Shown here piece after piece: positions 14,188-32,100 of a DNA stretch of 64,000 nucleotides. The DNA is taken from the IMG/VR virus record IMGVR_UViG_3300018891_000001, positions 1 through 64,000 of that record; one strand, given 5' to 3'. The position numbers and the translations under genes were made by a program. How positions within the stretch are numbered: position 1 is the stretch's first letter; the number at the start of each line of letters is the position of its first letter. The notes beneath the pieces were generated by a model, which saw only the letters and a list, made by a program, of their open reading frames with translations, was not told where the DNA came from and ran no database searches.

Positions 14188-17100
14188 TCATGAATAGCGA
14201 GTAACTGATTCCAAATAGAACGTCAATGACTTCTTATTGACTTGAAAATCCTTTACTTTTGCAACAAATCTAGTTGCACCAGTAAAGAAAGTAACATACT
14301 CTGGATAAATCGAAGCTACACGTTGCTTCTTGACATACACTTCATGACGAAGATTGCCAAGTTCATCAGCTTGAACCATAACTGCAATATGATTAGCCCA
14401 ATTTTGAATCATATTAGCAACCATCTCTGGCGTATAACCCGGAGTAAAGTTACCAATGTTCACTTTCGTAACCTCAAGTTGATCAAAACGAGTTACTTGA
14501 GGTTCTTTTAATTTTAAGTGTTCTGTTCCAGACACCTTACGTAAAGCTGCAACAAATTGATGTTTAGCTACAACCCAAGGGAAACTTAACCCACGAGCAG
14601 GCTCATCCACCGTTGCGCCACGCTTCGAAGCTGAAACAGAATAAGTCATCTGATAAGCAACCAAGCCAATATAAGCTGGATCAAATTGTTCTGAAAGAGC
14701 CATAAACTCTGCTTGACACTTTTCAGTAATAAAGTTGAGCGAATCATCTAGATCACGCTTCAACTGATTAATATATTGTTCTTTGGCATAATCACTTGCA
14801 AAAGAAATAAACTCAAGTTGAGACATTTCGGTATCAAACTTACGATACGCATTCGAAATAGCCGTATTGTACATAGATTTAATCATGCGTACATTACTTA
14901 AAACGGCCATTTGTTCCACATGAGACTGTGGCACTTCAACCACAGTGGAAATCGCACTGAGAAGATTATTCTCTGCATATTCACTTCTCAACTTCTTAAT
15001 ATCAGCAATAAATTCTTGTTCTTCCCATTTCAACATATATTCATGAACACGAGAAAGAACAGAATCATTCTGAATACCATTTGACTTCCCTTTTAAATGA
15101 GCGAACCAAGATGGACTTGCCCAAACATAACGACGTAATTTCTTATTGTACGTTGCAACTTCTGCTGGTGGATTTTCAATGAAAGAAAGTTCTTCTTTCA
15201 ATGCTTCTTCATATGCACCACCATGTTTTGCACGGTCAATTTCCCAAGACTGAACCCATGCAAGTAAATCAATAAGTTCTTGGAGTTCATTCACTCTCTT
15301 AATAATCGCTTTTGCTGCTGACATACTGCCAGCTTCATAATGAGAACGACCCTTATACCACAAAGCACGAACCGCATCAGCAAGTTTCGTAGCATAATCC
15401 GTTAACTCACCAATACGGTTTGGCTTTAACGTTTCTGCTACATACTCTAAAGATATTTCATACATCTTTAACTGTAACTCACGAGTATATTGACTCTTTG
15501 TAAAAGTAAATTTATACTTAGACATATCCACTGTACCCTTAAATGGGCAACCATTGTCGAAGAGAATCTGCCCATTCTCTTCCCAATAGTGGATATCTAA
15601 GAAAGCAGGAGCAGATTTGCATGCTTCTTCAACCGCTGTGACCAATTCTGGTTGAGTCATGCACAGTGATGTATCACCATCACAATCTGCTCCACCTTGA
15701 GAAATAGTATTAAAGTCATGGCACGACATAATAATCATGCCATCAAAAGCATCTTTCTTCATATAGCGTGAATAAGCACGTGCTTCAAGAACACGAGATT
15801 GCCCCATAGTCATCTGCGGATTACGAGCAACAGCTAGTTTGCCAACATACACCACATGACCATCTTTCTCTAACATAAAGCACGTACCAGGTTTAATTCC
15901 TTTATTCGGATTCACAAAAAGTTTTCCATTTTTACGAATCTCTTGATCCGTGCCACGCAACTTATACGCATCTAAAATCGCATACGGATCCATAATGATA
16001 AAACGATAATTCGCTTCAACCGGAATTAAACCCGATTTCCACTCTTTAATCAACTCTTGTAATAAAGAAAGAGCCTTTTCTTTCAAGAAAACATCTTGGT
16101 AAGAGTTCGGCGCATAATGTAAATAAAACGACAACAAAGAAACAAGAGTAGAATCTAACAATTCATCTTGTTCCTCTTCTGAATACTCTTCAAGTTGCAA
16201 CAAACGATCATGCCCTAAATACTCCTTCATCAATTCTACATCATGAAGTAACAATTTTGCACGATCCAAATGAGGTTTTAAAAGTTTAATCATAGTATCG
16301 GCACTCAATTTCATACCATGTATAAATTGATACGGTAAACTCACATATCTCTTTTTAAAGCGCATTGGTGCTCCAAAAAGAGCCACACGGAACTGCAATT
16401 GAATATCTTCAATTACATCTTCCAACGTATCTGTAGAAGCTTTGAATGAAGACATTGGAATCACAATATCTTCTTCAAAATACTTCTCTAAATCTGGAAT
16501 ATACACAGCATTGCCTTTTACAAAACCGTTAAACAAACGAACAACACCATTCTGAAAATGACGGCCAAACTCCGCTTCCGCTAAAGTCTTAATACGATTA
16601 TTGAAATACATTTGACCATCACCGGCTACTTGTTCAATAGGATGATCAGCCGCATCAAACACACGACTTTTCTTTGTATCTTTGCCAAAAGCTTTAAACT
16701 TACCTTGTGATACTTCTGAATAAACATCTTCGACAATACGAAGAGATACATTTCCGCCGAGAATAGAAATATCACCATTCTCGTGACGTACTACTTCTTT
16801 TCCAAAACGAATAAAGTTCGACTTAACACTATTCGAAAGCGTTAAGCCAAAACGTTTCATAGCTTTGACATAATCTAATTCATAAACAATCTCACCATTT
16901 TTATCTTGGCCCTTCACCTTCGCAAAGGCTAAAGGATTCATACCAAGAATATTCAATACATCCACAGGATGAATAATATGCTCTGCCACACCAACTACTT
17001 GGACTTGACGTTCTTGAGAAGGAGAACGCAAAGCATAACGAACCATACGTTCTACACCTTCATAATCAATATAACTCATTCCTAATCGAATAATATTCAT

Positions 17101-17667
17101 CGCCTTTGTAATATCCTCTTCTTTTAACGGTTTTAAATCAATGAAGAAAACGTGAGGCAATACATATGCATACACCTCACGTTCTATAACTTCACCATCA
17201 ACTATCTTTCTAACTGTCACCATACGTGGACCATCAAAAATAAATGGAGACAACATCTCTGCTGCATAAGAACCAGAAATCTCTTTATATCCTGATTTCT
17301 TATCTTCACCAACGAAGAAAGAATCAGAATAATTGCGAGTAGAAATATAACGACCATCAACAAATTCGATCGTATCTAAGTCTGCTTGTGCTACAATAAC
17401 ACGAATATTCTTGATACGACGAAGTTTCTTAGGAATTGGATGAGATTCCAAGAACTTCTTAAATACATGAGCTTGTTGTGGTGCAACACCTGCCAACTCT
17501 ACAGGATTCTCTAATACCTCCACTACATTTGCACCACTCGCAACCGCTTCCACAACTTTAGAAAAGTTTTTCGTACCAATTGCCGTTAAAGGCGAAAAAG
17601 AAGCCAAGCGTTCAACCACTTGGCTCACAGACTGAATAGGATTTAATACATTTTTCACATTGTTCAT
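14188..17667 (-). CDS. Single-chain two-barrel RNA polymerase (SPbeta YonO / RNAi RdRP-like)
   Basis: Catalytic GGADCDGD (DxDGD); ARNPQMT.GQ.RVLEA (RdRP RxP motif); AGDGQ and FVKG motifs; N-terminal HhH-like segment. Confidence 0.85.
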   Translation of the reverse strand: MNNVKNVLNPIQSVSQVVERLASFSPLTAIGTKNFSKVVEAVASGANVVEVLENPVELAGVAPQQAHVFKKFLESHPIPKKLRRIKNIRVIVAQADLDTIEFVDGRYISTRNYSDSFFVGEDKKSGYKEISGSYAAEMLSPFIFDGPRMVTVRKIVDGEVIEREVYAYVLPHVFFIDLKPLKEEDITKAMNIIRLGMSYIDYEGVERMVRYALRSPSQERQVQVVGVAEHIIHPVDVLNILGMNPLAFAKVKGQDKNGEIVYELDYVKAMKRFGLTLSNSVKSNFIRFGKEVVRHENGDISILGGNVSLRIVEDVYSEVSQGKFKAFGKDTKKSRVFDAADHPIEQVAGDGQMYFNNRIKTLAEAEFGRHFQNGVVRLFNGFVKGNAVYIPDLEKYFEEDIVIPMSSFKASTDTLEDVIEDIQLQFRVALFGAPMRFKKRYVSLPYQFIHGMKLSADTMIKLLKPHLDRAKLLLHDVELMKEYLGHDRLLQLEEYSEEEQDELLDSTLVSLLSFYLHYAPNSYQDVFLKEKALSLLQELIKEWKSGLIPVEANYRFIIMDPYAILDAYKLRGTDQEIRKNGKLFVNPNKGIKPGTCFMLEKDGHVVYVGKLAVARNPQMTMGQSRVLEARAYSRYMKKDAFDGMIIMSCHDFNTISQGGADCDGDTSLCMTQPELVTAVEEACKSAPAFLDIHYWEENGQILFDNGCPFKGTVDMSKYKFTFTKSQYTRELQLKMYEISLEYVAETLKPNRIGELTDYATKLADAVRALWYKGRSHYEAGSMSAAKAIIKRVNELQELIDLLAWVQSWEIDRAKHGGAYEEALKEELSFIENPPAEVATYNKKLRRYVWASPSWFAHLKGKSNGIQNDSVLSRVHEYMLKWEEQEFIADIKKLRSEYAENNLLSAISTVVEVPQSHVEQMAVLSNVRMIKSMYNTAISNAYRKFDTEMSQLEFISFASDYAKEQYINQLKRDLDDSLNFITEKCQAEFMALSEQFDPAYIGLVAYQMTYSVSASKRGATVDEPARGLSFPWVVAKHQFVAALRKVSGTEHLKLKEPQVTRFDQLEVTKVNIGNFTPGYTPEMVANMIQNWANHIAVMVQADELGNLRHEVYVKKQRVASIYPEYVTFFTGATRFVAKVKDFQVNKKSLTFYLESVTRYS

Positions 17668-21681: not shown

Positions 21682-22344
21682 GTGGAACTCATAGCACAGT
21701 ATATCGAAATTGATGAACCCAGAAGAGTAGATTTGCGGTTTTTAGATGTTCCTCCGATGTGGAGAGCCTTTCATGAAAGTACAGAACATAAAATCAGTAT
21801 ATTTGCAGGAAGGCAAATGGGGAAAACATATAACTTAGCTTTACGGGCTGTTCGCTCTATGTATGATTGTGTCGTGTATGTGCGTGATCATTATATGGTA
21901 AAGAGTATGGCCAACTTGATTGCTGATCTCAGTCCAGAATCTCCTGTCATAAGGATGTGTTCGAATTATGCTAGTGTTATATTGGGTACCGGGAGACACA
22001 TTGACATTTATGCCTTTTCTGCACCTAACATCCGTGGAAAACGATTTATGATGAAAGAAGTTTTGATAGATGAGTTCGATTGCGAAAGGTTTGAAATATT
22101 GTTAGAAAGAGTAAAGTTTGAGCTCGATCGTGCGATACATGTAGTATGTGTAGGAACTCCAAGTATAAGTCCTGACACACCGGGAAAACGATGGTTTAAG
22201 GAATCAGGAACAAAATATTATATTGATATGATTCATGTTCCAGAAGATATGGAGCAATGGGCACATGTATATGAATATCGTCCGAGTGCTCTCCAGAATG
22301 TTATTGATCGTCTTCCACCATTAGAGTATGATTATTCTTTTTAA
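21682..22344 (+). CDS. Stand-alone terminase-like ATPase domain
   Basis: AGRQMGKT (Walker A), VLIDE (Walker B) and VGTP (coupling motif); no nuclease domain. Confidence 0.65.
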   Translation: MELIAQYIEIDEPRRVDLRFLDVPPMWRAFHESTEHKISIFAGRQMGKTYNLALRAVRSMYDCVVYVRDHYMVKSMANLIADLSPESPVIRMCSNYASVILGTGRHIDIYAFSAPNIRGKRFMMKEVLIDEFDCERFEILLERVKFELDRAIHVVCVGTPSISPDTPGKRWFKESGTKYYIDMIHVPEDMEQWAHVYEYRPSALQNVIDRLPPLEYDYSF

Positions 22345-22361
22345 TTTTTTCTATAAAACTA

Positions 22362-22390
22362 TTGAAATGCATTACAAGAAATAGTATATT
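22362..22390 (+). promoter_or_regulatory. SigmaA-type promoter of the ncRNA island, overlapped by an operator variant
   Basis: TTGAAA-17-TATATT; TGAAATGCATTACA at 22363-22376. Confidence 0.6.
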
Positions 22391-22393
22391 ATA

Positions 22394-22488
22394 GATGGGT
22401 GGTTTATTCCGATTACGGCACATGGATATGTGCTTCTCCTCTCCCAATTGTCTGGCGGTTATCGCCGTTTCCGGAGGGCCCACTCATC
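22394..22488 (+). ncRNA. Candidate small structured RNA
   Basis: Begins near the predicted +1; closing stem GATGGGTGG/CCACTCATC; internal hairpins GCACAT/ATGTGC and GGCG/CGCC; C/U-rich linker. Confidence 0.4.
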
Positions 22489-22736
22489 AACCACATCCTC
22501 TTTAATTATATATTTTTGGAGTGGGCCTACTTAAATCTGATACATGGGTAGATCATGAATTGTAGCGGTAAGACACTCCTGCTTAGGAGACACCAGACAG
22601 GTGGCAAACATCATACATGAAAGGCTTTTCTTGTTTGAGCCTTATCAAGCAAGTGGTGAGCCATTTGAAATAACCCTTTCATATTTATAGCCATGAAGGA
22701 ACACACTCCAGTAACCCACGGGTCTGGAGTCCCCAT

Positions 22737-22811
22737 TGCCTAGTAGCTCAGTGGTAGAGCAATCGGCTGTTAACCGATCGGTCGCAGGTTCGAATCCTGC
22801 CTAGGCAGCCA
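22737..22811 (+). tRNA. tRNA-Asn (GTT)
   Basis: Acceptor stem TGCCTAG/CTAGGCA; anticodon stem ATCGG/CCGAT with loop CT-GTT-AA; T arm GCAGG-TTCGAAT-CCTGC; encoded CCA. Confidence 0.97.
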
Positions 22812-22831
22812 ACCTCTATTCTAAAAGATTG

Positions 22832-23333
22832 AAATAAATTATACAGTGGCTGAATAATGGATTGGCAGTCCATAAGGCAGTCATGATGCCTGGGATGAGA
22901 AACAGTTGTCTGAGATGGCAGAGATCATCCTTTGAGACTTGATGAAGTCGAATGGTATGTAGGTGTTCCATTTATATAAGAAGCTTAATGCACTCTAGCT
23001 GGCCGGCGTGATAGGGGAGGATAAAGAGTGGTTAATACGTAATCCCACGCCCCAACGGTAAAGCGTTATCGTGGTTGATGTGTTGAAAGGCACTATAAGG
23101 CACGCTAGAGGTGCTGTCGCATAAAACCACGAACTCGATGGACTAGTATACAGTATGTGACATTTGAATCTAATCCACGCCATGTGACAGTTATGGGTAA
23201 TCAATCCCATCCAAGATAACGAGGTAATGTGGAGTAGGAGTAGCTAACCTACAAGAGCATTATTCTCCTTGGTGGCAGAAAGAAGTGCTTATATAAATGG
23301 TTGGAGGTGGAATCCTCCTTGTATAATTTATTT
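22832..23333 (+). ncRNA. Large ornate ncRNA, ROOL-like
   Basis: 15-bp closing stem 22832-22846/23319-23333; perfect 13-bp long-range stem 22968-22980/23288-23300; 8-bp stem 23069-23076/23125-23132; many hairpins; no credible ORF; next to a tRNA. Confidence 0.7.
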
Positions 23334-23610
23334 GAGTCTTTTAGTAAGAGGCTCAAGTGTTTTGATACTATGGGTTGTAAAGCCCACCACCTTTCTTTTT
23401 TGTATATAAGTCAACAACTCCTTTCGACATGGCAGGATTTTTTCCTCATTATTAAGGTATTATGAGTGAGGTTTTTGCCTGCCACACCATATTAATAGTT
23501 ACACCAATTTAGGTGTTAACTATAGATTCATACCTTGTACGACGCATTAATAATACCTCCGGGGCATATAAGAGGGAGATTTTTACTGTTGGTCTGCACA
23601 GGTTTTTGCT

Positions 23611-23793
23611 CCCCGCCCTAAAGGGCATTCGAGGTTTTTATGACATCTCCTTTTTCCCTTGAGTGCCTTTTAGGGTGTGGGGTATATGCTCAATCCCAAC
23701 TGCCCACCTCTAGGTATTGTTGTGTCTTACGAGTAACTTGTGCCAATTTGAATGGGAAAAAGCACTAGAACGTGTATAGATTCTAGTGCTTTT
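23611..23793 (+). ncRNA. Candidate sRNA ending in an intrinsic terminator
   Basis: 14-bp stem 23621-23634/23657-23670 with three G-U pairs (fixes + strand); terminator 23758-23793 plus U-run. Confidence 0.45.
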
Positions 23794-23883
23794 TCTTTTT
23801 TTATTTTTTAGATTTATTAATTTTATATTTTAATAATTTATTTTTTAAGTTTTTATTTTTTCTTGTAATGCTCGTCTATAGTA

Positions 23884-23912
23884 TTGAAAACCTAGGGAAA
23901 CTGTGGTAATAT
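23884..23912 (+). promoter_or_regulatory. SigmaA promoter of the parM operon
   Basis: TTGAAA-17-TAATAT with TG extension. Confidence 0.7.
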
Positions 23913-23974: not shown

Positions 23975-25162
23975 ATGATGCAAACTGAATATCGTGCTAA
24001 GCCAGGAAAAGCTTCCAAGAAGCAAGTAGAATCGATGCCTTTGTTGGTATCTATTGATGTAGGTTTTGGTGAATTGAAACGGTTATCCAATATCTTTCCG
24101 CACCCAGTAGCGATTCCAAGTGCAGTGGTTCCTGGGGCAAAACCAGCATCTAGTCGTTTATTTGAGCTTCAAACGATTGATGATGATAGTTTGATTGTCA
24201 CAACAGAAGATGGAACATTCTTTGTTGGAAAGCAAGCCATGCATGTGCCAACAAGCGGAAGTAAGCGTACACAGGTGCGTGATCGTGCAAATGACATGAT
24301 GAGTCGTGTACTATTCCAAACAGGCATTGCGTTAAGTGTTCCACATGAAGATGGAGAGTACAAGGTATTTGTTGTAACAGGGCTACCAAATGATGATTAC
24401 GATTTATCCGTGAAAAAGAATCTAGAAGAATTCTTGCATCGCTCTTTTGTTGTGCAATTCCATCTTAGTGAAACACGCACGATTACAAAAACCATTCATG
24501 TGGTTGGAGTTGAAATTTTACGTCAGCCGGAAGGTTCGGTGACTTATAATCAGTTTGATTTTGATGTAGAACGCTTCCTAGTTCCAAGTCCAAATGCTCG
24601 TCGCACATTAGGTATTATTGATTTTGGTCATTTTACGACAGATTACGCTTTATTCCGTGATGGTATTTTGATTGAAGATGCAACCATCAATGGGTCTGCT
24701 GTAGGAGTGACGGAGGTTTATAATAAGCTGCGTCGTCGTCTTATTGTAAAATTTGATGAAATGGGATATGAATACCGTCCAACGGATGAAGATTTGGATA
24801 TGGCGGTGCGTACGCATAAGATTCATTATATGAATCAGGAGTTTGATGTATCTAAGGAAGTCCAAGAAAGTGCTAAAGAAGTGGCAGCCATTATTGCAAA
24901 AGAAGTATTGGATGCATGGGGGAACGAGACAAATCGATTGGAATCTATTATCGTTTCCGGTGGCGGCTCTCACGTCTTTTCGAATTACTTGTTAGAGGAG
25001 TTTAAGATTCGTAAAAAACAAGGTTTCCATGTGATTGATGCACCACAATTTAGTAATGTCATTGGATTCTATATGTACGGTTGCATTGCGTTATCTGATG
25101 AATATTCATCTGAAGCACTCTTTAGTGAATATATTAATCCAGTATTTGTGGAGGCTTTATAA
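23975..25162 (+). CDS. parM: ParM/StbA-family actin-like partition ATPase
   Basis: Phosphate-1 IDVGFG, phosphate-2 IIDFGHFTTD, adenosine motif VSGGGS; QPEG motif. Confidence 0.88.
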   Translation: MMQTEYRAKPGKASKKQVESMPLLVSIDVGFGELKRLSNIFPHPVAIPSAVVPGAKPASSRLFELQTIDDDSLIVTTEDGTFFVGKQAMHVPTSGSKRTQVRDRANDMMSRVLFQTGIALSVPHEDGEYKVFVVTGLPNDDYDLSVKKNLEEFLHRSFVVQFHLSETRTITKTIHVVGVEILRQPEGSVTYNQFDFDVERFLVPSPNARRTLGIIDFGHFTTDYALFRDGILIEDATINGSAVGVTEVYNKLRRRLIVKFDEMGYEYRPTDEDLDMAVRTHKIHYMNQEFDVSKEVQESAKEVAAIIAKEVLDAWGNETNRLESIIVSGGGSHVFSNYLLEEFKIRKKQGFHVIDAPQFSNVIGFYMYGCIALSDEYSSEALFSEYINPVFVEAL

Positions 25163-25350
25163 TGGCAAAGGATAGATTATACGCTCGAATTCGGGAAGAC
25201 GACGTAATCATTCGAGAGCATTTTGCCAATATTAAGCCGAGTGACCATCCATATGAAATTAGAAGATTATTAGAAAAAGCGATACTGATTGAAAGAAAAG
25301 AGAAGGAAATACTTGAAAAAGTGGAAATTCGCATAGGGCAGGACTCATAA
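25162..25350 (+). CDS. Putative ParR-like DNA-binding adaptor
   Basis: 62 aa, translationally coupled (TAATG) to parM; beta-strand/helix/helix (RHH-like) pattern. Confidence 0.55.
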   Translation: MAKDRLYARIREDDVIIREHFANIKPSDHPYEIRRLLEKAILIERKEKEILEKVEIRIGQDS

Positions 25351-29142: not shown

Positions 29143-32100
29143 ATGAGTGTACAAGCCATTGAACTAACAGAAAGACAAATGGACGAATTAGAATCGGAGA
29201 TTCGAACGGATCCGGTAAAATGGGCATACTGGAAACTCAAAGATCCAAAAGGAAGACCGTGGAAAGCCCGTTGGTACCAAAAGAAAATCATTGACGGTAT
29301 TATGAAAGGTGATCGTCGAATTGCCGCTCGTATGGGACGACGGGTAGGAAAAACAGAAACCATGGTTGTCTTTTGTTTATGGTATGCCTTTCATCATAAA
29401 AATGCTCGCTTGCTAATTGTTGCTCCGTATGAGCATCAAGTCCGATTAATATTCATGCGATTATCAGAATTGGTGCGAGATAGTGATGAACTGCATCATT
29501 CTGTAACCATTACCAAAAATCCGTTTATTGCTTCTTTTGGAAATGGTTCTAAGATTATGGGGTTTACAGCAGGGGCCAACTCTGGTACACAAGCGGGTGC
29601 GAGCTTGCGTGGTCAGCGTGCCGATTGGATTTTTATGGACGAAGTCGATTACATGAGCCGTGAAGCGATTGACGCTACCATTGCAATTTCTTATGAAGAC
29701 CCAAAACGAATTGGAATTTGGGTATCTTCTACACCTACCGGAAAGCGAGATTTCTTCTATGAAGTTTGTACAAATCCTGATACGGGATACAAGGCTTATC
29801 ATTTCCCATCTCATGTAAACCCGGATTTTGATGAACGCATGGAAGGCGAGCTTCGTGCAACGATGACCGTACAAGGTTATATTCACGAAGTTGAAGCGGA
29901 GTTTGGAGAAGAAACCATCGGAGTATTTAGCAAATCAGCGGTAGAGCGAGCAAAATCGCAATATCTTTACAGTTATCGAGAATTAAACGTGTGGGAGAAG
30001 GAACAGTACAAAAAACAGGGCTACAACATAGATGACATTATCTTCTTCCCGGAGTATACTAAAAGAAATCCAGCCCCTCCTGCGATTCGGGTTGTAGGGG
30101 TAGACTGGGATAAAAACGCAGCTTGCTAAGTAAATGGGTGGTATGATGCTCATATGCTAAGATTCCACTCAAAAGAGAATCTCATTAAGCTATATGAGTA
30201 CATGTATGAAAATCAGACAGTATGCTTACCAAGAAAGTTAGAAAAATATCATGAAGCATTAGCAAGATGCAATTATTGTCCCCTTCAGGAGTAATCCTGT
30301 CGATATAAACCGGGTGAATTGCTGGAATCCCCTTAGAGCCAATTTGACCACAACGTAAGGATGAAATAAGCCTAAACGTGACGGTTTGAAAACAAATTGG
30401 ATTGGGTAATCAGCAGCCAAGCTCCGAACAGGAGAAGGTTCAACGACTATCTCGTAAGAGAGTAGGGTTCAAGTGAACTCGAAGTGCCCGGCCCCTTTTA
30501 CAAGAGGGTGATGATATAGTCTGAGCTTACATGAAAGTGTAAGAGGGTTGTCGGAAACGGGCAATCCGTAACACAACTGAAATATGCAGAAGCTACTCAA
30601 ATTATTGTTACAGAATTTGATGAGTTATTAAAGAAATTCCGAGTAGCAAAGAGATATGAGATTCCTCGTGGAGATTTTACGTACGACAATGCCGTACAAA
30701 AATTAATTGAAATCAATGAAATTTGGAATCCAAAATTCTATTACATTGATGCGGGGCATGGTAATGTAGCATAATTTGTTTTCACCCTGTATAATCAAAT
30801 TATTAACAAAAAAGGGTGAGAGATTATGTTTCCTGAATGGTATCAAGAAGCAGAAAGATTATATGTAGATGAAAAGCTTTCTTATACAAAGATTGGACAA
30901 ATACTTGGTGTTGGAAGAAAAACAGTAAGCCACTATTTGCGAAAAGGTGGACATGAATCGAATTTAAAATTTTATCCTAATGTAGACCACAGCAAGTATA
31001 GAAAGTATCAAATTGACGAATCAGTTTTTGAAACCATAGATACAGAAGAAAAAGCATACTGGCTTGGAATGTTATATGCTGATGGCAATGTGTCTGATCG
31101 TTCAAATGATATAGAAGTCACTTTACAAGCAGAAGATTATAATCATCTGTTAAAGTTAAGGGATTTCTTTAAAACTGATAAACCCGTCTACAAAAAGGAT
31201 AAAAAGAAATACGATAAAACCTATGAAGGTTACAGGCTTATTATTTGTAGTAAGAAAATCAAACAAGATTTGATTCGATTAGGTTGTTTACCTAGAAAAT
31301 CACATATACTTCAATTTCCTACAACAGAACAAGTCCCAGAACATTTGATGTCTCACTTTGTGAGAGGATATTTCGATGGCGATGGTTGTATTACATTTGC
31401 TAATAAAGGAGTTACATTAGTCATTGAGTTATTAGGGACAGAAGATTTTCTTACTCAATATTTAATTTGGTCTGAAAGAAATCATCATCGCATTCATGAT
31501 TTTAAACATTCGAAGGAAACCAAAAGAGTCCAACACTTTGGTGAAGAAGCTAGATTTATATTAAATCGCTTATATGTAAATGCCAATGTGTATCTTGAAA
31601 GGAAATATAATCTTTATAAAAATTATGCATTGCCGTCTAATGGGGAAACTCATTAGAGTATCAGAGCGGAATGAAGCGGGAAAGCTGAGATGCTAACCCG
31701 AACCGAAGGCTAGGCAAATCCTAGTCAGGGGCAGAGCATAGGAGCTGACCGGTAACAGGAATAACGCTCCCACGAGGCCGCTCCACCCAAACCGTCAAGG
31801 TCGGTGGGTGAAAAGGTATGCCGAGCTTGCGGGAAATGAACCGTAAGAAGTAGAGGATAAAAAGCCTTTACGATAACAATACTGGAGTATCAAATTGAAA
31901 TGCTTCGAAAATATGGACGAGATAATCCAGAAAGCGGCATGCTTCAAAAGGTGAAACGAATCCATTTCTCTGAGAAAATTGAAATTCGTGATCCTGGTAC
32001 AAGAGAAATTGACAAAAAAGATGTCAAAAACTTTATGGTTAATCAAACTAGTATTCTTCTTGAACGGGATCAATTGGTGTTATCACCGTTTGACGATATG

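What the first reader, a model, noticed from the sequence alone, without database searches (positions are those of the whole stretch)
22832..23333. ~500-nt ornate non-coding RNA, probably ROOL-class, next to tRNA-Asn
Seen: the ends pair (AAATAAATTATACAG/TTGTATAATTTATTT, 15 bp); a perfect 13-bp long-range helix (22968-22980/23288-23300); an 8-bp helix enclosing a GAAA-tetraloop hairpin; at least six more hairpins; no credible ORF. Knowledge: ROOL and GOLLD RNAs are large RNAs of unknown function found in Firmicutes and their phages, often near tRNAs. Inference: segments ATCCTTTGA, AATGGTAT..GTTCC and TAGCTGG..ATAGGG..GTGGTTAAT resemble my recollection of ROOL, but this is memory and not an alignment.
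Basis: partly seen in the sequence, partly recalled or inferred. Interest (0 to 1): 0.8.

Follow-up and report, generated by a model that had tools for sequence, protein, structure and literature searches.

The report
Compact divergent ROOL RNA beside tRNA-Asn
This 502-nt stretch of a jumbo Bacillaceae phage encodes a real, evolutionarily maintained, highly folded non-coding RNA that is a compact, divergent relative of the cage-forming ROOL RNAs, sitting where sister phages carry tRNA arrays and missed by standard Rfam annotation.

Summary
The default Rfam scan (gathering cut-offs) finds nothing here. A permissive scan gives a full-length ROOL match (model 1-574, 86.5 bits, E=1.5e-17), below Rfam's 99.1-bit cut-off and far below 15 canonical ROOLs (275-367 bits).

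Two homologues exist. One is in a related phage contig (87% identical, 63.9 bits). The other is an unannotated gap of a Virgibacillus halodenitrificans megaplasmid (76%, 82.3 bits).

Across the three, 145 consensus pairs include 32 with compensatory double changes. Between window and closest relative, all 40 substitutions at paired sites keep pairing. The internal linker is hypervariable, as in ROOL.

A small covariance model built from this clade finds canonical ROOLs at the homologous position.

Compared with the Rfam consensus, the clade is shorter (about 500-525 nt). It lacks two or three peripheral hairpins and has an altered GGAUAC-type loop.

The RNA lies 20 nt downstream of tRNA-Asn, behind a promoter block conserved in sister phages. 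Those phages carry 2-11 tRNAs at this site.

Most likely it is a self-assembling ROOL-type RNA co-transcribed with the tRNA. Its biological role, as for all ROOLs, is unknown.

The parts
22362..22390 (+). Sigma-70-type promoter-like block (TTGAAA, 17 nt, TATATT) heading the tRNA/ROOL locus
   Evidence: Consensus scan, 10 of 12 matches. The block and the following AGTGGGTGGTTTATT are nearly invariant in three sister phages (L153, L144, L146) that are otherwise divergent here. Function is inferred and no transcript data were available.
22737..22811 (+). tRNA-Asn (anticodon GTT) with encoded CCA, 20 nt upstream of the RNA
   Evidence: Rfam tRNA 75.5 bits and ARAGORN. tRNA-Asn is the constant anchor of this locus in the relatives L141, L144, L146-148, L150 and L153.
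22832..23333 (+). ROOL-like RNA gene (502 nt from the first to the last P1 pair; the Rfam alignment spans 22826-23336)
   Evidence: ROOL RF03087 86.5 bits, E=1.5e-17, model 1-574. 145 consensus pairs, with 16 (two sequences) and 32 (three sequences) compensatory double changes.
22832..22846 (+). P1 5' strand; pairs with 23319-23333 (15 bp) and closes the whole RNA
   Evidence: Script check. Two double changes against L143 and further ones against L154.
22847..22883 (+). First hairpin (6 + 7 bp) with the UGAAUAA internal loop, equivalent to the ROOL hairpin with GUGAAGA
   Evidence: One or two compensatory changes.
22886..22958 (+). 5' three-way domain. It holds a hairpin with a UGAGAU loop (ROOL has GGAUAC) and a 5-bp hairpin 22936-22949. 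The GUGA-loop hairpin of ROOL (model positions 111-136) is absent.
   Evidence: The Rfam alignment shows the deletion in all three clade members. Helices. The register of the closing helix is ambiguous.
22968..22991 (+). 5' strand of the long-range helix stack (13 + 4 + 3 bp); pairs with 23275-23300
   Evidence: Perfect 13 bp. Three double changes against L143 and more against L154.
22993..23110 (+). Middle domain: 7 + 3 bp closing helix, AUAG junction, GUGGUUAA loop, GAAA-tetraloop hairpin 23080-23093 and UAUAA junction. The interior is about half the canonical length.
   Evidence: The inner (E) helix has two competing pairings. The Virgibacillus copy supports the canonical ROOL pairing by a C-G to A-U change and breaks the alternative.
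23113..23191 (+). Continuous 10-bp helix (23113-23122/23182-23191) closing the hypervariable linker 23123-23181
   Evidence: The linker is 37% divergent plus indels, against about 13% elsewhere. Two double changes in the helix. Canonical ROOL has an internal loop (AGUA/GAAA) here.
23193..23210 (+). Hairpin AUGGG/CCCAU carrying the ROOL signature loop UAAUCAAU
   Evidence: The 24-nt degenerate core GTGANAGTTNNNGGTAATCAATCC occurs in only 18 IMG/VR stretches. Three are this phage; 13 of the other 15 were tested and all 13 are canonical ROOLs. The loop is UAAACAUC in L143 and UAACCAGU in L154.
23211..23272 (+). Long 3' hairpin (5 + 10 + 5 bp) whose loop AGUAGCUAA (23239-23247) contains the palindrome UAGCUA
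   Evidence: The loop matches the ROOL consensus GU(A/C)GCU. In solved ROOL cages this loop is reported to form a self-complementary kissing contact between half-shells (PMC12286853, PMC12990946). The mapping of the loop name is my inference.
23303..23318 (+). Last hairpin GGAGG/CCUCC, just before the P1 3' strand
   Evidence: One compensatory change in L154.
23329..23369 (+). Terminator-like hairpin followed by a short T run, directly after P1
   Evidence: Consensus scan and fold. L143 has a different hairpin at the same place and L154 has GAGT followed by six T. Weak evidence; the 3' end is not mapped.

Best explanation
The region encodes a functional, highly structured non-coding RNA of about 502 nt. 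It is a compact, divergent homologue of ROOL RNA.

Shown: it aligns end to end with the ROOL covariance model, keeps the ROOL order of helices and junctions, and has been kept folded by selection in three lineages.

Inferred:
- It is transcribed from the conserved promoter at about 22362-22390 together with tRNA-Asn.
- Its 5' end is released when the tRNA 3' trailer is processed, only 20 nt upstream of P1.
- It ends near the hairpin at 23329-23359.

Inferred by homology: like solved ROOLs, the flat monomer self-assembles without protein into a dihedral homo-oligomeric cage through loop-loop and minor-groove contacts. These include the palindromic UAGCUA loop, and the hypervariable linker faces the interior. 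Because peripheral hairpins are missing, including apparently the apical variable one, the number of subunits may differ from the octamer.

The biological role is unknown for the whole family. The locus comparison shows only that this RNA occupies the cargo slot that holds tRNA arrays in sister phages. That ties it to the phage tRNA and translation programme.
For: Identity:
- ROOL RF03087 matches 22826-23336 on the + strand at 86.5 bits, E=1.5e-17, model 1-574.
- The homologues also match full length: L143 at 63.9 bits, E=3.3e-12, and L154 at 82.3 bits, E=5.5e-17.
- The 24-nt ROOL core motif is shared with canonical ROOLs.
- Reciprocally, an 84-position model built from the three clade members hits the homologous site of 18 canonical ROOL loci (E from 1.8e-5 to 0.85 in 344 kb). 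It had one off-target hit and none in the ROOL-less sister phages.

Selection for structure:
- Window against L143: 145 pairs, 16 double compensatory, 8 one-sided, 0 broken.
- Slid-partner controls give 0-2 double changes and 36-48% pairing, and 0 of 500 shuffles reach the observed values.
- All 40 substitutions at paired sites keep pairing.
- With the Virgibacillus copy, 32 pairs show double changes.
- The linker is hypervariable, as reported for ROOL (PMC12286853).

Non-coding.

Context:
- A same-strand tRNA-Asn lies 20 nt upstream.
- The promoter block is conserved.
- Sister phages have tRNA arrays in place of the RNA.
- The Virgibacillus copy is preceded by a decayed tRNA that aligns with tRNA-Asn and the spacer.
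- All 15 canonical ROOLs examined lie among same-strand tRNAs.

Cage formation by ROOLs, and stoichiometry that changes with small structural differences: PMC12286853 and PMC12990946.
Against: - The score is below Rfam's gathering cut-off (99.1) and three to four times lower than canonical ROOLs.
- Hairpins present in the consensus are absent.
- The GGAUAC-type loop, among the best conserved ROOL features, reads UGAGAU, UGAAAU or UGAAAG. It is probably the loop reported to make a tertiary contact, but I could not confirm that mapping.
- The signature loop UAAUCAAU varies within the clade.
- Pseudoknots could not be tested because the candidates are invariant.
- The interior of the middle domain is ambiguous.
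- Only three sequences support the covariation, and the tested structure was predicted from those same sequences.
Confidence: 0.85

Rival explanations
1. It is a decaying relic of a once canonical ROOL gene, no longer functional, which explains the low score and the missing hairpins.
For: The score is only 86.5 bits against 275-367 for canonical ROOLs. Hairpins are deleted. Neighbouring tRNA genes in this locus have visibly decayed.
Against: Three copies at 76-87% identity keep every helix. There are 32 pairs with compensatory double changes, no broken pair between window and L143, and all 40 paired-site substitutions are compatible. In Virgibacillus the adjacent tRNA has decayed beyond detection while the RNA kept its fold. 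The same hairpins are missing in all three copies, so the compact form is ancestral to the clade.
Confidence: 0.04
2. It is a new RNA class unrelated to ROOL that merely shares composition and a few motifs, so the sub-threshold Rfam match is spurious.
For: The match is below the gathering score. blastn and nhmmer find no similarity to canonical ROOLs. The interior of the middle domain could be aligned only with local ends.
Against: E-values of 1e-12 to 1e-17 for three sequences, each over the full model with the same order of helices. An exact 24-nt signature is shared with canonical ROOLs. The reciprocal clade model lands on the homologous site of canonical ROOLs. The genomic habit is the same.
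Confidence: 0.04
3. It is a cis-acting leader or regulatory element for the downstream actin-like partition gene (23975-25162), or part of its centromere region, and not an independent RNA gene.
For: It lies in the 1.6-kb gene-free stretch upstream of the ALP/ParM-like gene on the same strand.
Against: Relatives with the same ALP gene lack the RNA and carry tRNAs instead. About 640 nt separate it from the gene, including terminator-like hairpins and a block conserved in all relatives. The Virgibacillus copy sits in an unrelated Tad/type IV pilus-like operon.
Confidence: 0.03
4. It is a ROOL homologue, but it acts as a monomer or with a protein partner and not as an RNA-only cage, because contacts made by the missing or altered elements are lost.
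For: Peripheral hairpins are missing, the GGAUAC-type loop is altered and the signature loop is variable. Reported cage contacts are only 2-4 bp each (PMC12990946), so small changes could abolish them.
Against: The palindromic or consensus GU(A/C)GCU loop, the GNRA hairpin and the UAUAA junction are retained. Known ROOLs tolerate loss of the apical stem and still assemble; the L. salivarius ROOL forms a hexamer. The linker behaves as in cage-forming ROOLs.
Confidence: 0.25

Closest known systems
ROOL RNA (Rfam RF03087; Weinberg et al. 2017, PMC5737381; cryo-EM in Kretsch et al. 2025, PMC12286853)
   Same: Full-length covariance-model alignment and a closing P1. The order is the same: first hairpin, 5' multi-hairpin domain, long-range helix, middle domain with AUAG junction, GNRA hairpin and UAUAA, linker-closing helix with a hypervariable linker, signature hairpin GGUAAUCAAUCC, long 3' hairpin with GU(A/C)GCU loop, and last hairpin. 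It is encoded in a phage on the same strand as a tRNA.
   Different: 64-86 bits against 275-367 bits. About 500-525 nt against 575-648 nt for the canonical examples tested here. It lacks the GUGA-loop hairpin (model positions 111-136), the small hairpin before the long 3' hairpin and, apparently, the variable apical hairpin. The internal loop of the linker-closing helix is replaced by a continuous 10-bp helix. The GGAUAC loop is replaced by UGARAK. Only one tRNA is adjacent, not an island.
Lactobacillus salivarius megaplasmid ROOL (550 nt, hexameric cage; described in PMC12990946)
   Same: A shorter ROOL with a reduced apical stem. It is carried on a megaplasmid, like the Virgibacillus copy, and shows that trimmed ROOLs still assemble, with a different number of subunits.
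   Different: That RNA is a canonical Rfam member. No direct sequence comparison was made here because its sequence was not among the fetched loci. The present clade is shorter still.
GOLLD RNA
   Same: A large ornate phage or prophage RNA found in tRNA arrays, which forms RNA-only cages with an internal variable linker.
   Different: No match to the GOLLD model even at E<=10. The literature describes its sequence and secondary structure as unrelated.
OLE RNA
   Same: A large ornate non-coding RNA of Bacillota that oligomerises (as a dimer).
   Different: No Rfam match. OLE is chromosomal, works with Oap proteins and is not associated with tRNAs.

Membership tests
ROOL RNA (RF03087) | Covariance-model score at or above Rfam's curated gathering score (99.1 bits) | tested here: not met
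   Window 86.5 bits, L154 82.3, L143 63.9. There was no hit in the gathering-threshold scan. Canonical ROOLs score 275-367.
ROOL RNA (RF03087) | Statistically significant full-length match to the ROOL model (E<=1e-5, the criterion used to collect 1,596 ROOLs in PMC12286853) | tested here: met
   E=1.5e-17, 5.5e-17 and 3.3e-12, each spanning model 1-574. The criterion is quoted.
ROOL RNA (RF03087) | Reciprocal recognition: a model of the candidate clade finds accepted ROOLs at the homologous position | tested here: met
   Model R1 (84 positions, 3 sequences) hits 18 canonical ROOL loci at the signature-hairpin and 3'-hairpin site, with E from 1.8e-5 to 0.85. It gives no hit in ROOL-less sister phages.
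ROOL RNA (RF03087) | P1 joining the 5' and 3' ends, and a nested architecture with several multistem junctions (six in Weinberg 2017; five in the P1-P16 scheme) | tested here: met
   The order of helices is the same in the Rfam alignment and in the independent consensus fold. One junction is lost because a small hairpin is absent.
ROOL RNA (RF03087) | Structure supported by covariation | tested here: met
   16 and 32 pairs with double changes. Slid controls give 0-2, and 0 of 500 shuffles are as high. Only three sequences were available.
ROOL RNA (RF03087) | Highly conserved 3'-half nucleotides: GUGA-AGUU, GGUAAUCAAUCC loop, UAUAA junction, GNRA hairpin, GU(A/C)GCU loop | tested here: met
   All are present in the window. 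Within the clade, the GGUAAUCAAUCC loop and GUGA-AGUU vary in L143 and L154.
ROOL RNA (RF03087) | 5'-domain features of the consensus: GGAUAC loop and the hairpin with the GUGA loop | tested here: not met
   The loop reads UGAGAU, UGAAAU or UGAAAG. Model positions 111-136 are deleted in all three copies.
ROOL RNA (RF03087) | Three pseudoknots or long-range loop contacts | tested here: inconclusive
   Only invariant candidates were found (GUUAA 23031-35 with UUGAU 23075-79; GUGG 23028-31 with CCAC 23127-30), so covariation cannot judge them. The reported contact between the internal loop of the long 3' hairpin and the linker flank has no obvious counterpart here.
ROOL RNA (RF03087) | Internal linker without conserved sequence or structure | tested here: met
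   23123-23181 is 37% divergent with indels, against about 13% elsewhere. It differs again in L154.
ROOL RNA (RF03087) | Size (average 581 nt) | tested here: not met
   502-511 nt in the window, about 525 nt in L154. The 15 canonical examples are 575-648 nt.
ROOL RNA (RF03087) | Phage, prophage or megaplasmid location next to same-strand tRNA genes | tested here: met
   Jumbo phage genes. tRNA-Asn lies 20 nt upstream. A decayed tRNA lies upstream of the megaplasmid copy.
ROOL RNA (RF03087) | RNA-only homo-oligomeric cage | not testable with these tools
   This needs in vitro transcription with mass photometry or cryo-EM. Here only the retention of the self-complementary loop could be noted.
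GOLLD RNA | Match to the Rfam GOLLD covariance model | tested here: not met
   No GOLLD hit at E<=10 in 22300-23900, nor at gathering score in the whole window.
OLE RNA | Match to the Rfam OLE covariance model | tested here: not met
   No OLE hit.

The most novel reading that the evidence does not exclude
This is the founding example of a minimal ROOL subclass of Bacillaceae phages and megaplasmids.

- It travels as a tRNA-plus-ROOL unit, and its 5' end is made by tRNA processing.
- It assembles into a cage with a subunit number different from the known hexamer and octamer, because the apical and other peripheral hairpins are gone.
- It can take the place of a tRNA array in the phage genome, which would mean that ROOL function is tied directly to the phage tRNA supply, or to its protection during infection.
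Probability: 0.2. Interest if true: 0.7.

Novelty: new variant of a known kind. Interest (0 to 1): 0.5.

Why it matters
ROOL and GOLLD are the only natural RNAs known to build closed cages without protein, and nobody knows what the cages are for.

- **Annotation gap.** Rfam gathering cut-offs miss a whole branch of the family. HMM filters can even hide it in a permissive scan.
- **A minimal scaffold.** A naturally trimmed ROOL of about 500 nt shows which hairpins are dispensable. It would also be a smaller scaffold for structural work.
- **A locus-level clue.** In sister jumbo phages the same slot, behind the same promoter and the same tRNA-Asn, holds 2-11 tRNAs. In a megaplasmid the RNA has outlived its companion tRNA.
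- **A testable host.** One member sits in a cultured strain, Virgibacillus halodenitrificans Bac324, where expression, processing and deletion phenotypes could be tested directly.

Tried and rejected
- **Default Rfam scan of the window.** Only the tRNA and a group I intron were found. ROOL appears only in E-value mode.
- **Similarity searches with the RNA.** blastn against 50,697 GenBank phages found nothing. nhmmer against 117 fetched loci found only copies of itself.
- **14-mer GGGTAATCAATCCC scan of IMG/VR.** It gave mostly chance hits and was replaced by a 24-nt degenerate core.
- **MAFFT alignment with canonical ROOLs.** It misaligned the 5' half and was not used for pair counts.
- **More clade members.**
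  - ALP-gene neighbours in IMG/VR, JGI metagenomes and Logan/ENA gave one RNA homologue (L143) and many tRNA arrays.
  - Two clade-invariant blocks scanned in IMG/VR returned only the source phage.
  - The Virgibacillus copy searched against plasmids and phages returned only itself.
- **First scan of the Virgibacillus region (1.3 kb, E<=0.01).** It showed no ROOL. That was a filter artefact, corrected; I had briefly taken it as true divergence.
- **Coding reading.** Rejected.
- **Pseudoknot search.** It gave only invariant candidates.
- **RNAalifold pairing GGCGU/ACGCC for the inner helix of the middle domain.** It is contradicted by the Virgibacillus copy, which supports the Rfam pairing instead. 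I left it as ambiguous.
- **Hand-parsing the Rfam structure line to single-pair resolution.** It proved unreliable, because non-canonical but positive-scoring pairs are not flagged. I relied on tool-made alignments instead.

Full report
**1. What is in the sequence**

The stretch 22832-23333 lies in a 1.6-kb gene-free interval, between a 220-aa ORF ending at 22344 and an actin-like (ALP/ParM-type) gene starting at 23975.

- tRNA-Asn(GTT) occupies 22737-22811 on the + strand.
22832-22846 pairs with 23319-23333 over 15 bp, and 22968-22980 pairs with 23288-23300 over 13 perfect bp.
- The helix around the GAAA-hairpin domain is 7 bp plus 3, not 8.
- The + strand folds at -157.8 kcal/mol, z=-3.99. 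The minus strand is also unusually stable (z=-3.67), so energy does not pick the strand.
- The strand follows from 17 G-U pairs, the Rfam match and the tRNA.
- The only sizeable ORF, 71 aa antisense, is interrupted in both homologues and shows no codon-position bias.

**2. Which family**

With Rfam's gathering thresholds the 64-kb window yields only the tRNA and a group I intron. In E-value mode, ROOL (RF03087) aligns from model position 1 to 574 with 22826-23336, at 86.5 bits and E=1.5e-17, against a gathering score of 99.1. No GOLLD or OLE match appears even at E<=10.

To calibrate the score, I collected loci sharing a 24-nt degenerate ROOL core that the window also matches. The 15 canonical ROOLs among them score 275-367 bits and measure 575-648 nt. 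The window RNA is therefore a far outlier. It would still pass the E<=1e-5 criterion by which Kretsch et al. assembled their ROOL set.

**3. Host element**

The window is part of a 215.9-kb IMG/VR contig.

- It encodes a large terminase interrupted by a group I intron with a LAGLIDADG ORF, a portal protein, and a protein with an RdRP-type fold.
- The portal is 33-41% identical to those of the Bacillus jumbo phages 0305phi8-36, vB_BceM_WH1, Edson and KLEB27-3, and to Moorella phage MTATph1.
- The ALP gene is 67% identical to ParM/StbA genes on 200-212-kb plasmids of Bacillus licheniformis, B. paralicheniformis and B. halotolerans.

The likely host is a member of the Bacillaceae, and the element may live as a phage-plasmid. 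Both points are inference.

**4. Homologues and covariation**

Walking through ALP relatives gave one contig, L143 (ENA metagenome; ALP 80% identical). It carries the RNA at 87% identity with a full-length ROOL match of 63.9 bits. Its 5' end is cut by the contig end.

blastn against plasmids found a third copy, 76% identical over the whole length. It lies in an unannotated 1-kb gap of a 313-kb plasmid of Virgibacillus halodenitrificans Bac324, inside a Tad/type IV pilus-like operon. Scanned in a 1.3-kb frame it gave no Rfam hit. In a 556-nt frame it gave ROOL at 82.3 bits, E=5.5e-17, full length. The first result was a filter artefact.

Window against L143 (consensus fold):
- 145 pairs, of which 16 changed on both sides and stayed paired, 8 changed on one side compatibly, and none is broken.
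- With partners slid by 1-3 columns, only 0-2 double changes and 36-48% pairing remain. None of 500 shuffles reaches the observed values.
- All 40 substitutions at paired positions are compatible with pairing.
- Divergence is 13.8% at paired positions, 12.7% at unpaired positions outside the linker, and 37% plus indels in the linker 23123-23181.

With three sequences, 32 of 145 pairs show double changes.

Caveats: there are only three sequences, and the structure was predicted on the same sequences. The slid control addresses relatedness but not that circularity.

**5. Reciprocal test**

I built an 84-position covariance model from the clade's 3' subdomain: the signature hairpin plus the long hairpin. 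In 344 kb it retrieved the three clade members at 95-107 bits. It then retrieved the homologous site in 18 canonical ROOL loci, with E from 1.8e-5 to 0.85. There was one off-target hit and none in the ROOL-less sister phages.

**6. Same and different**

The order of elements is that of ROOL:
- P1, then the first hairpin.
- A 5' domain closed by a short helix.
- A long-range helix stack.
- A middle domain with an AUAG junction, a GUGGUUAA loop (ROOL has GGUGGUAAC), a GNRA hairpin and a UAUAA junction.
- A helix closing a variable linker.
- The signature hairpin with the UAAUCAAU loop.
- A long 3' hairpin with a GU(A/C)GCU loop, then a last hairpin.

Differences shared by all three copies:
- The GUGA-loop hairpin (model positions 111-136) is absent.
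- The small hairpin before the long 3' hairpin is absent.
- The interior of the middle domain is about half as long and appears to lack the variable apical hairpin.
- The AGUA/GAAA internal loop of the linker-closing helix is replaced by a continuous 10-bp helix.
- The GGAUAC loop reads UGARAK.

Within the clade even the signature loop varies: UAAUCAAU, UAAACAUC, UAACCAGU.

The inner helix of the middle domain is ambiguous. RNAalifold prefers GGCGU/ACGCC, but the Virgibacillus copy breaks that pairing. It supports the canonical ROOL pairing through a C-G to A-U change.

**7. Locus comparison**

A promoter-like block (TTGAAA, 17 nt, TATATT, at 22362-22390) and the following AGTGGGTGGTTTATT are almost invariant in three sister phages. 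Downstream, tRNA-Asn is the constant element. After it the sister phages carry tRNA arrays:

| Locus | tRNAs in the locus |
|---|---|
| L003 | 2 tRNA genes (types not determined), no ROOL |
| L141 | 9 |
| L144 | 11 |
| L146-148 | Asn, Ser, Ser, Tyr, plus a tRNA-like gene |
| L150, L153 | 3 each |

The window phage, and L143 as far as its contig reaches, have the ROOL-like RNA there instead.

In Virgibacillus, the flank just upstream of the RNA aligns with the D-loop, T-arm, acceptor 3' strand and spacer of the window's tRNA-Asn. It is no longer recognised as a tRNA. A tRNA-plus-RNA unit thus seems ancestral, and the RNA has been maintained after its tRNA decayed.

All 15 canonical ROOLs examined also lie among same-strand tRNAs.

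**8. Mechanism**

*Shown:* a conserved, folded, non-coding ROOL homologue on the tRNA strand.

*Inferred from context:* co-transcription with tRNA-Asn from the conserved promoter; a 5' end generated by tRNA 3' processing 20 nt upstream of P1; a 3' end near the hairpin at 23329-23359.

*Inferred by homology:* canonical ROOLs form RNA-only dihedral cages. Two are octamers and the shorter L. salivarius RNA is a hexamer. They are held by 2-4-bp loop contacts and minor-groove contacts, including a self-complementary kissing loop between half-shells, and the variable linker sits inside the cage.

The window keeps a perfect palindrome (UAGCUA) in the corresponding loop. It also keeps the GNRA hairpin and a hypervariable linker. 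I therefore consider self-assembly likely (about 0.55), possibly with a different subunit number.

The biological role is unknown for the whole family. The swap with tRNA arrays argues only for a link to the phage tRNA and translation programme.

**9. Verdict**

It is best filed as a new, compact, divergent variant of ROOL that standard annotation misses.

It is not categorically new, and its interest is moderate. It extends a much-studied but functionally unexplained family, offers a natural minimal version and a cultured host, and adds a locus-level clue.

Noticed in passing
window 30259-30543 and 30826-31656: A group I intron (Rfam 86.9 bits) interrupts the large terminase gene (N-terminal part 29143-30129). 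It is followed by an ORF with a LAGLIDADG domain, presumably the intron's homing endonuclease. The relative L003 has an uninterrupted 595-aa terminase.
   Followed up: partly
window 14188-17667 (minus strand): A 1159-aa protein matches Pfam RdRP (PF05183, E=1e-8), the fold of cellular RNA-dependent RNA polymerases. It may be a YonO-like single-subunit RNA polymerase of the phage; that comparison comes from my own knowledge and was not tested.
   Followed up: no
window 23975-25350: An actin-like ALP/ParM partition gene is followed by a 62-aa ORF. This pair is conserved in all relatives and is 67% identical to genes on 200-212-kb Bacillus plasmids. That suggests this jumbo phage family persists as plasmid prophages.
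   Followed up: partly
window 23430-23490; L143:566-621: A nested hairpin has a 7-bp outer stem, U-rich internal loops on both sides and an inner hairpin (z=-5.0 against shuffles). It is followed by CACCA in the window. The architecture is kept in L143, L150 and L144 while the inner hairpin sequence is completely different. Its function is unknown.
   Followed up: partly
L146:3534-3605, L147:3533-3604, L148:3532-3603, L149:62-133: Sister phages carry a tRNA-like gene with a normal T-arm but an enlarged anticodon loop. ARAGORN reads it as a four-base anticodon (gtaa, acaa, acag). It could be a frameshift-suppressor-type tRNA.
   Followed up: no
window about 22520-22620: The leader between the conserved promoter and tRNA-Asn aligns with tRNA-Trp of the sister phages L153 and L144, but neither ARAGORN nor Rfam recognises it. 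It looks like a decayed tRNA ending in ACACCA.
   Followed up: partly
L154:4925-4992 (Virgibacillus halodenitrificans plasmid NZ_CP033050.1): A decayed tRNA that aligns with the window's tRNA-Asn lies just upstream of the ROOL-like RNA. Both sit in an unannotated gap within a Tad/type IV pilus-like operon (RcpC/CpaB, secretion ATPase, T2SS F-type protein, DUF4320, class F sortase).
   Followed up: partly
window 23599-23692; L143:735-824: A long hairpin upstream of the ALP gene gives the same weak match to a plant microRNA precursor model (MIR1446, 28 bits, E about 0.001) in both phages. The family name is surely meaningless, but the conserved hairpin may belong to the partition locus (centromere or operator).
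   Followed up: no
L154:4600-5900 against L154:4985-5540: The same ROOL-like RNA was invisible to the Rfam scan in a 1.3-kb frame. It scored 82.3 bits (E=5.5e-17) in a 556-nt frame. Speed filters can hide members of this clade, so negative scans of long sequences should not be trusted for it.
   Followed up: yes
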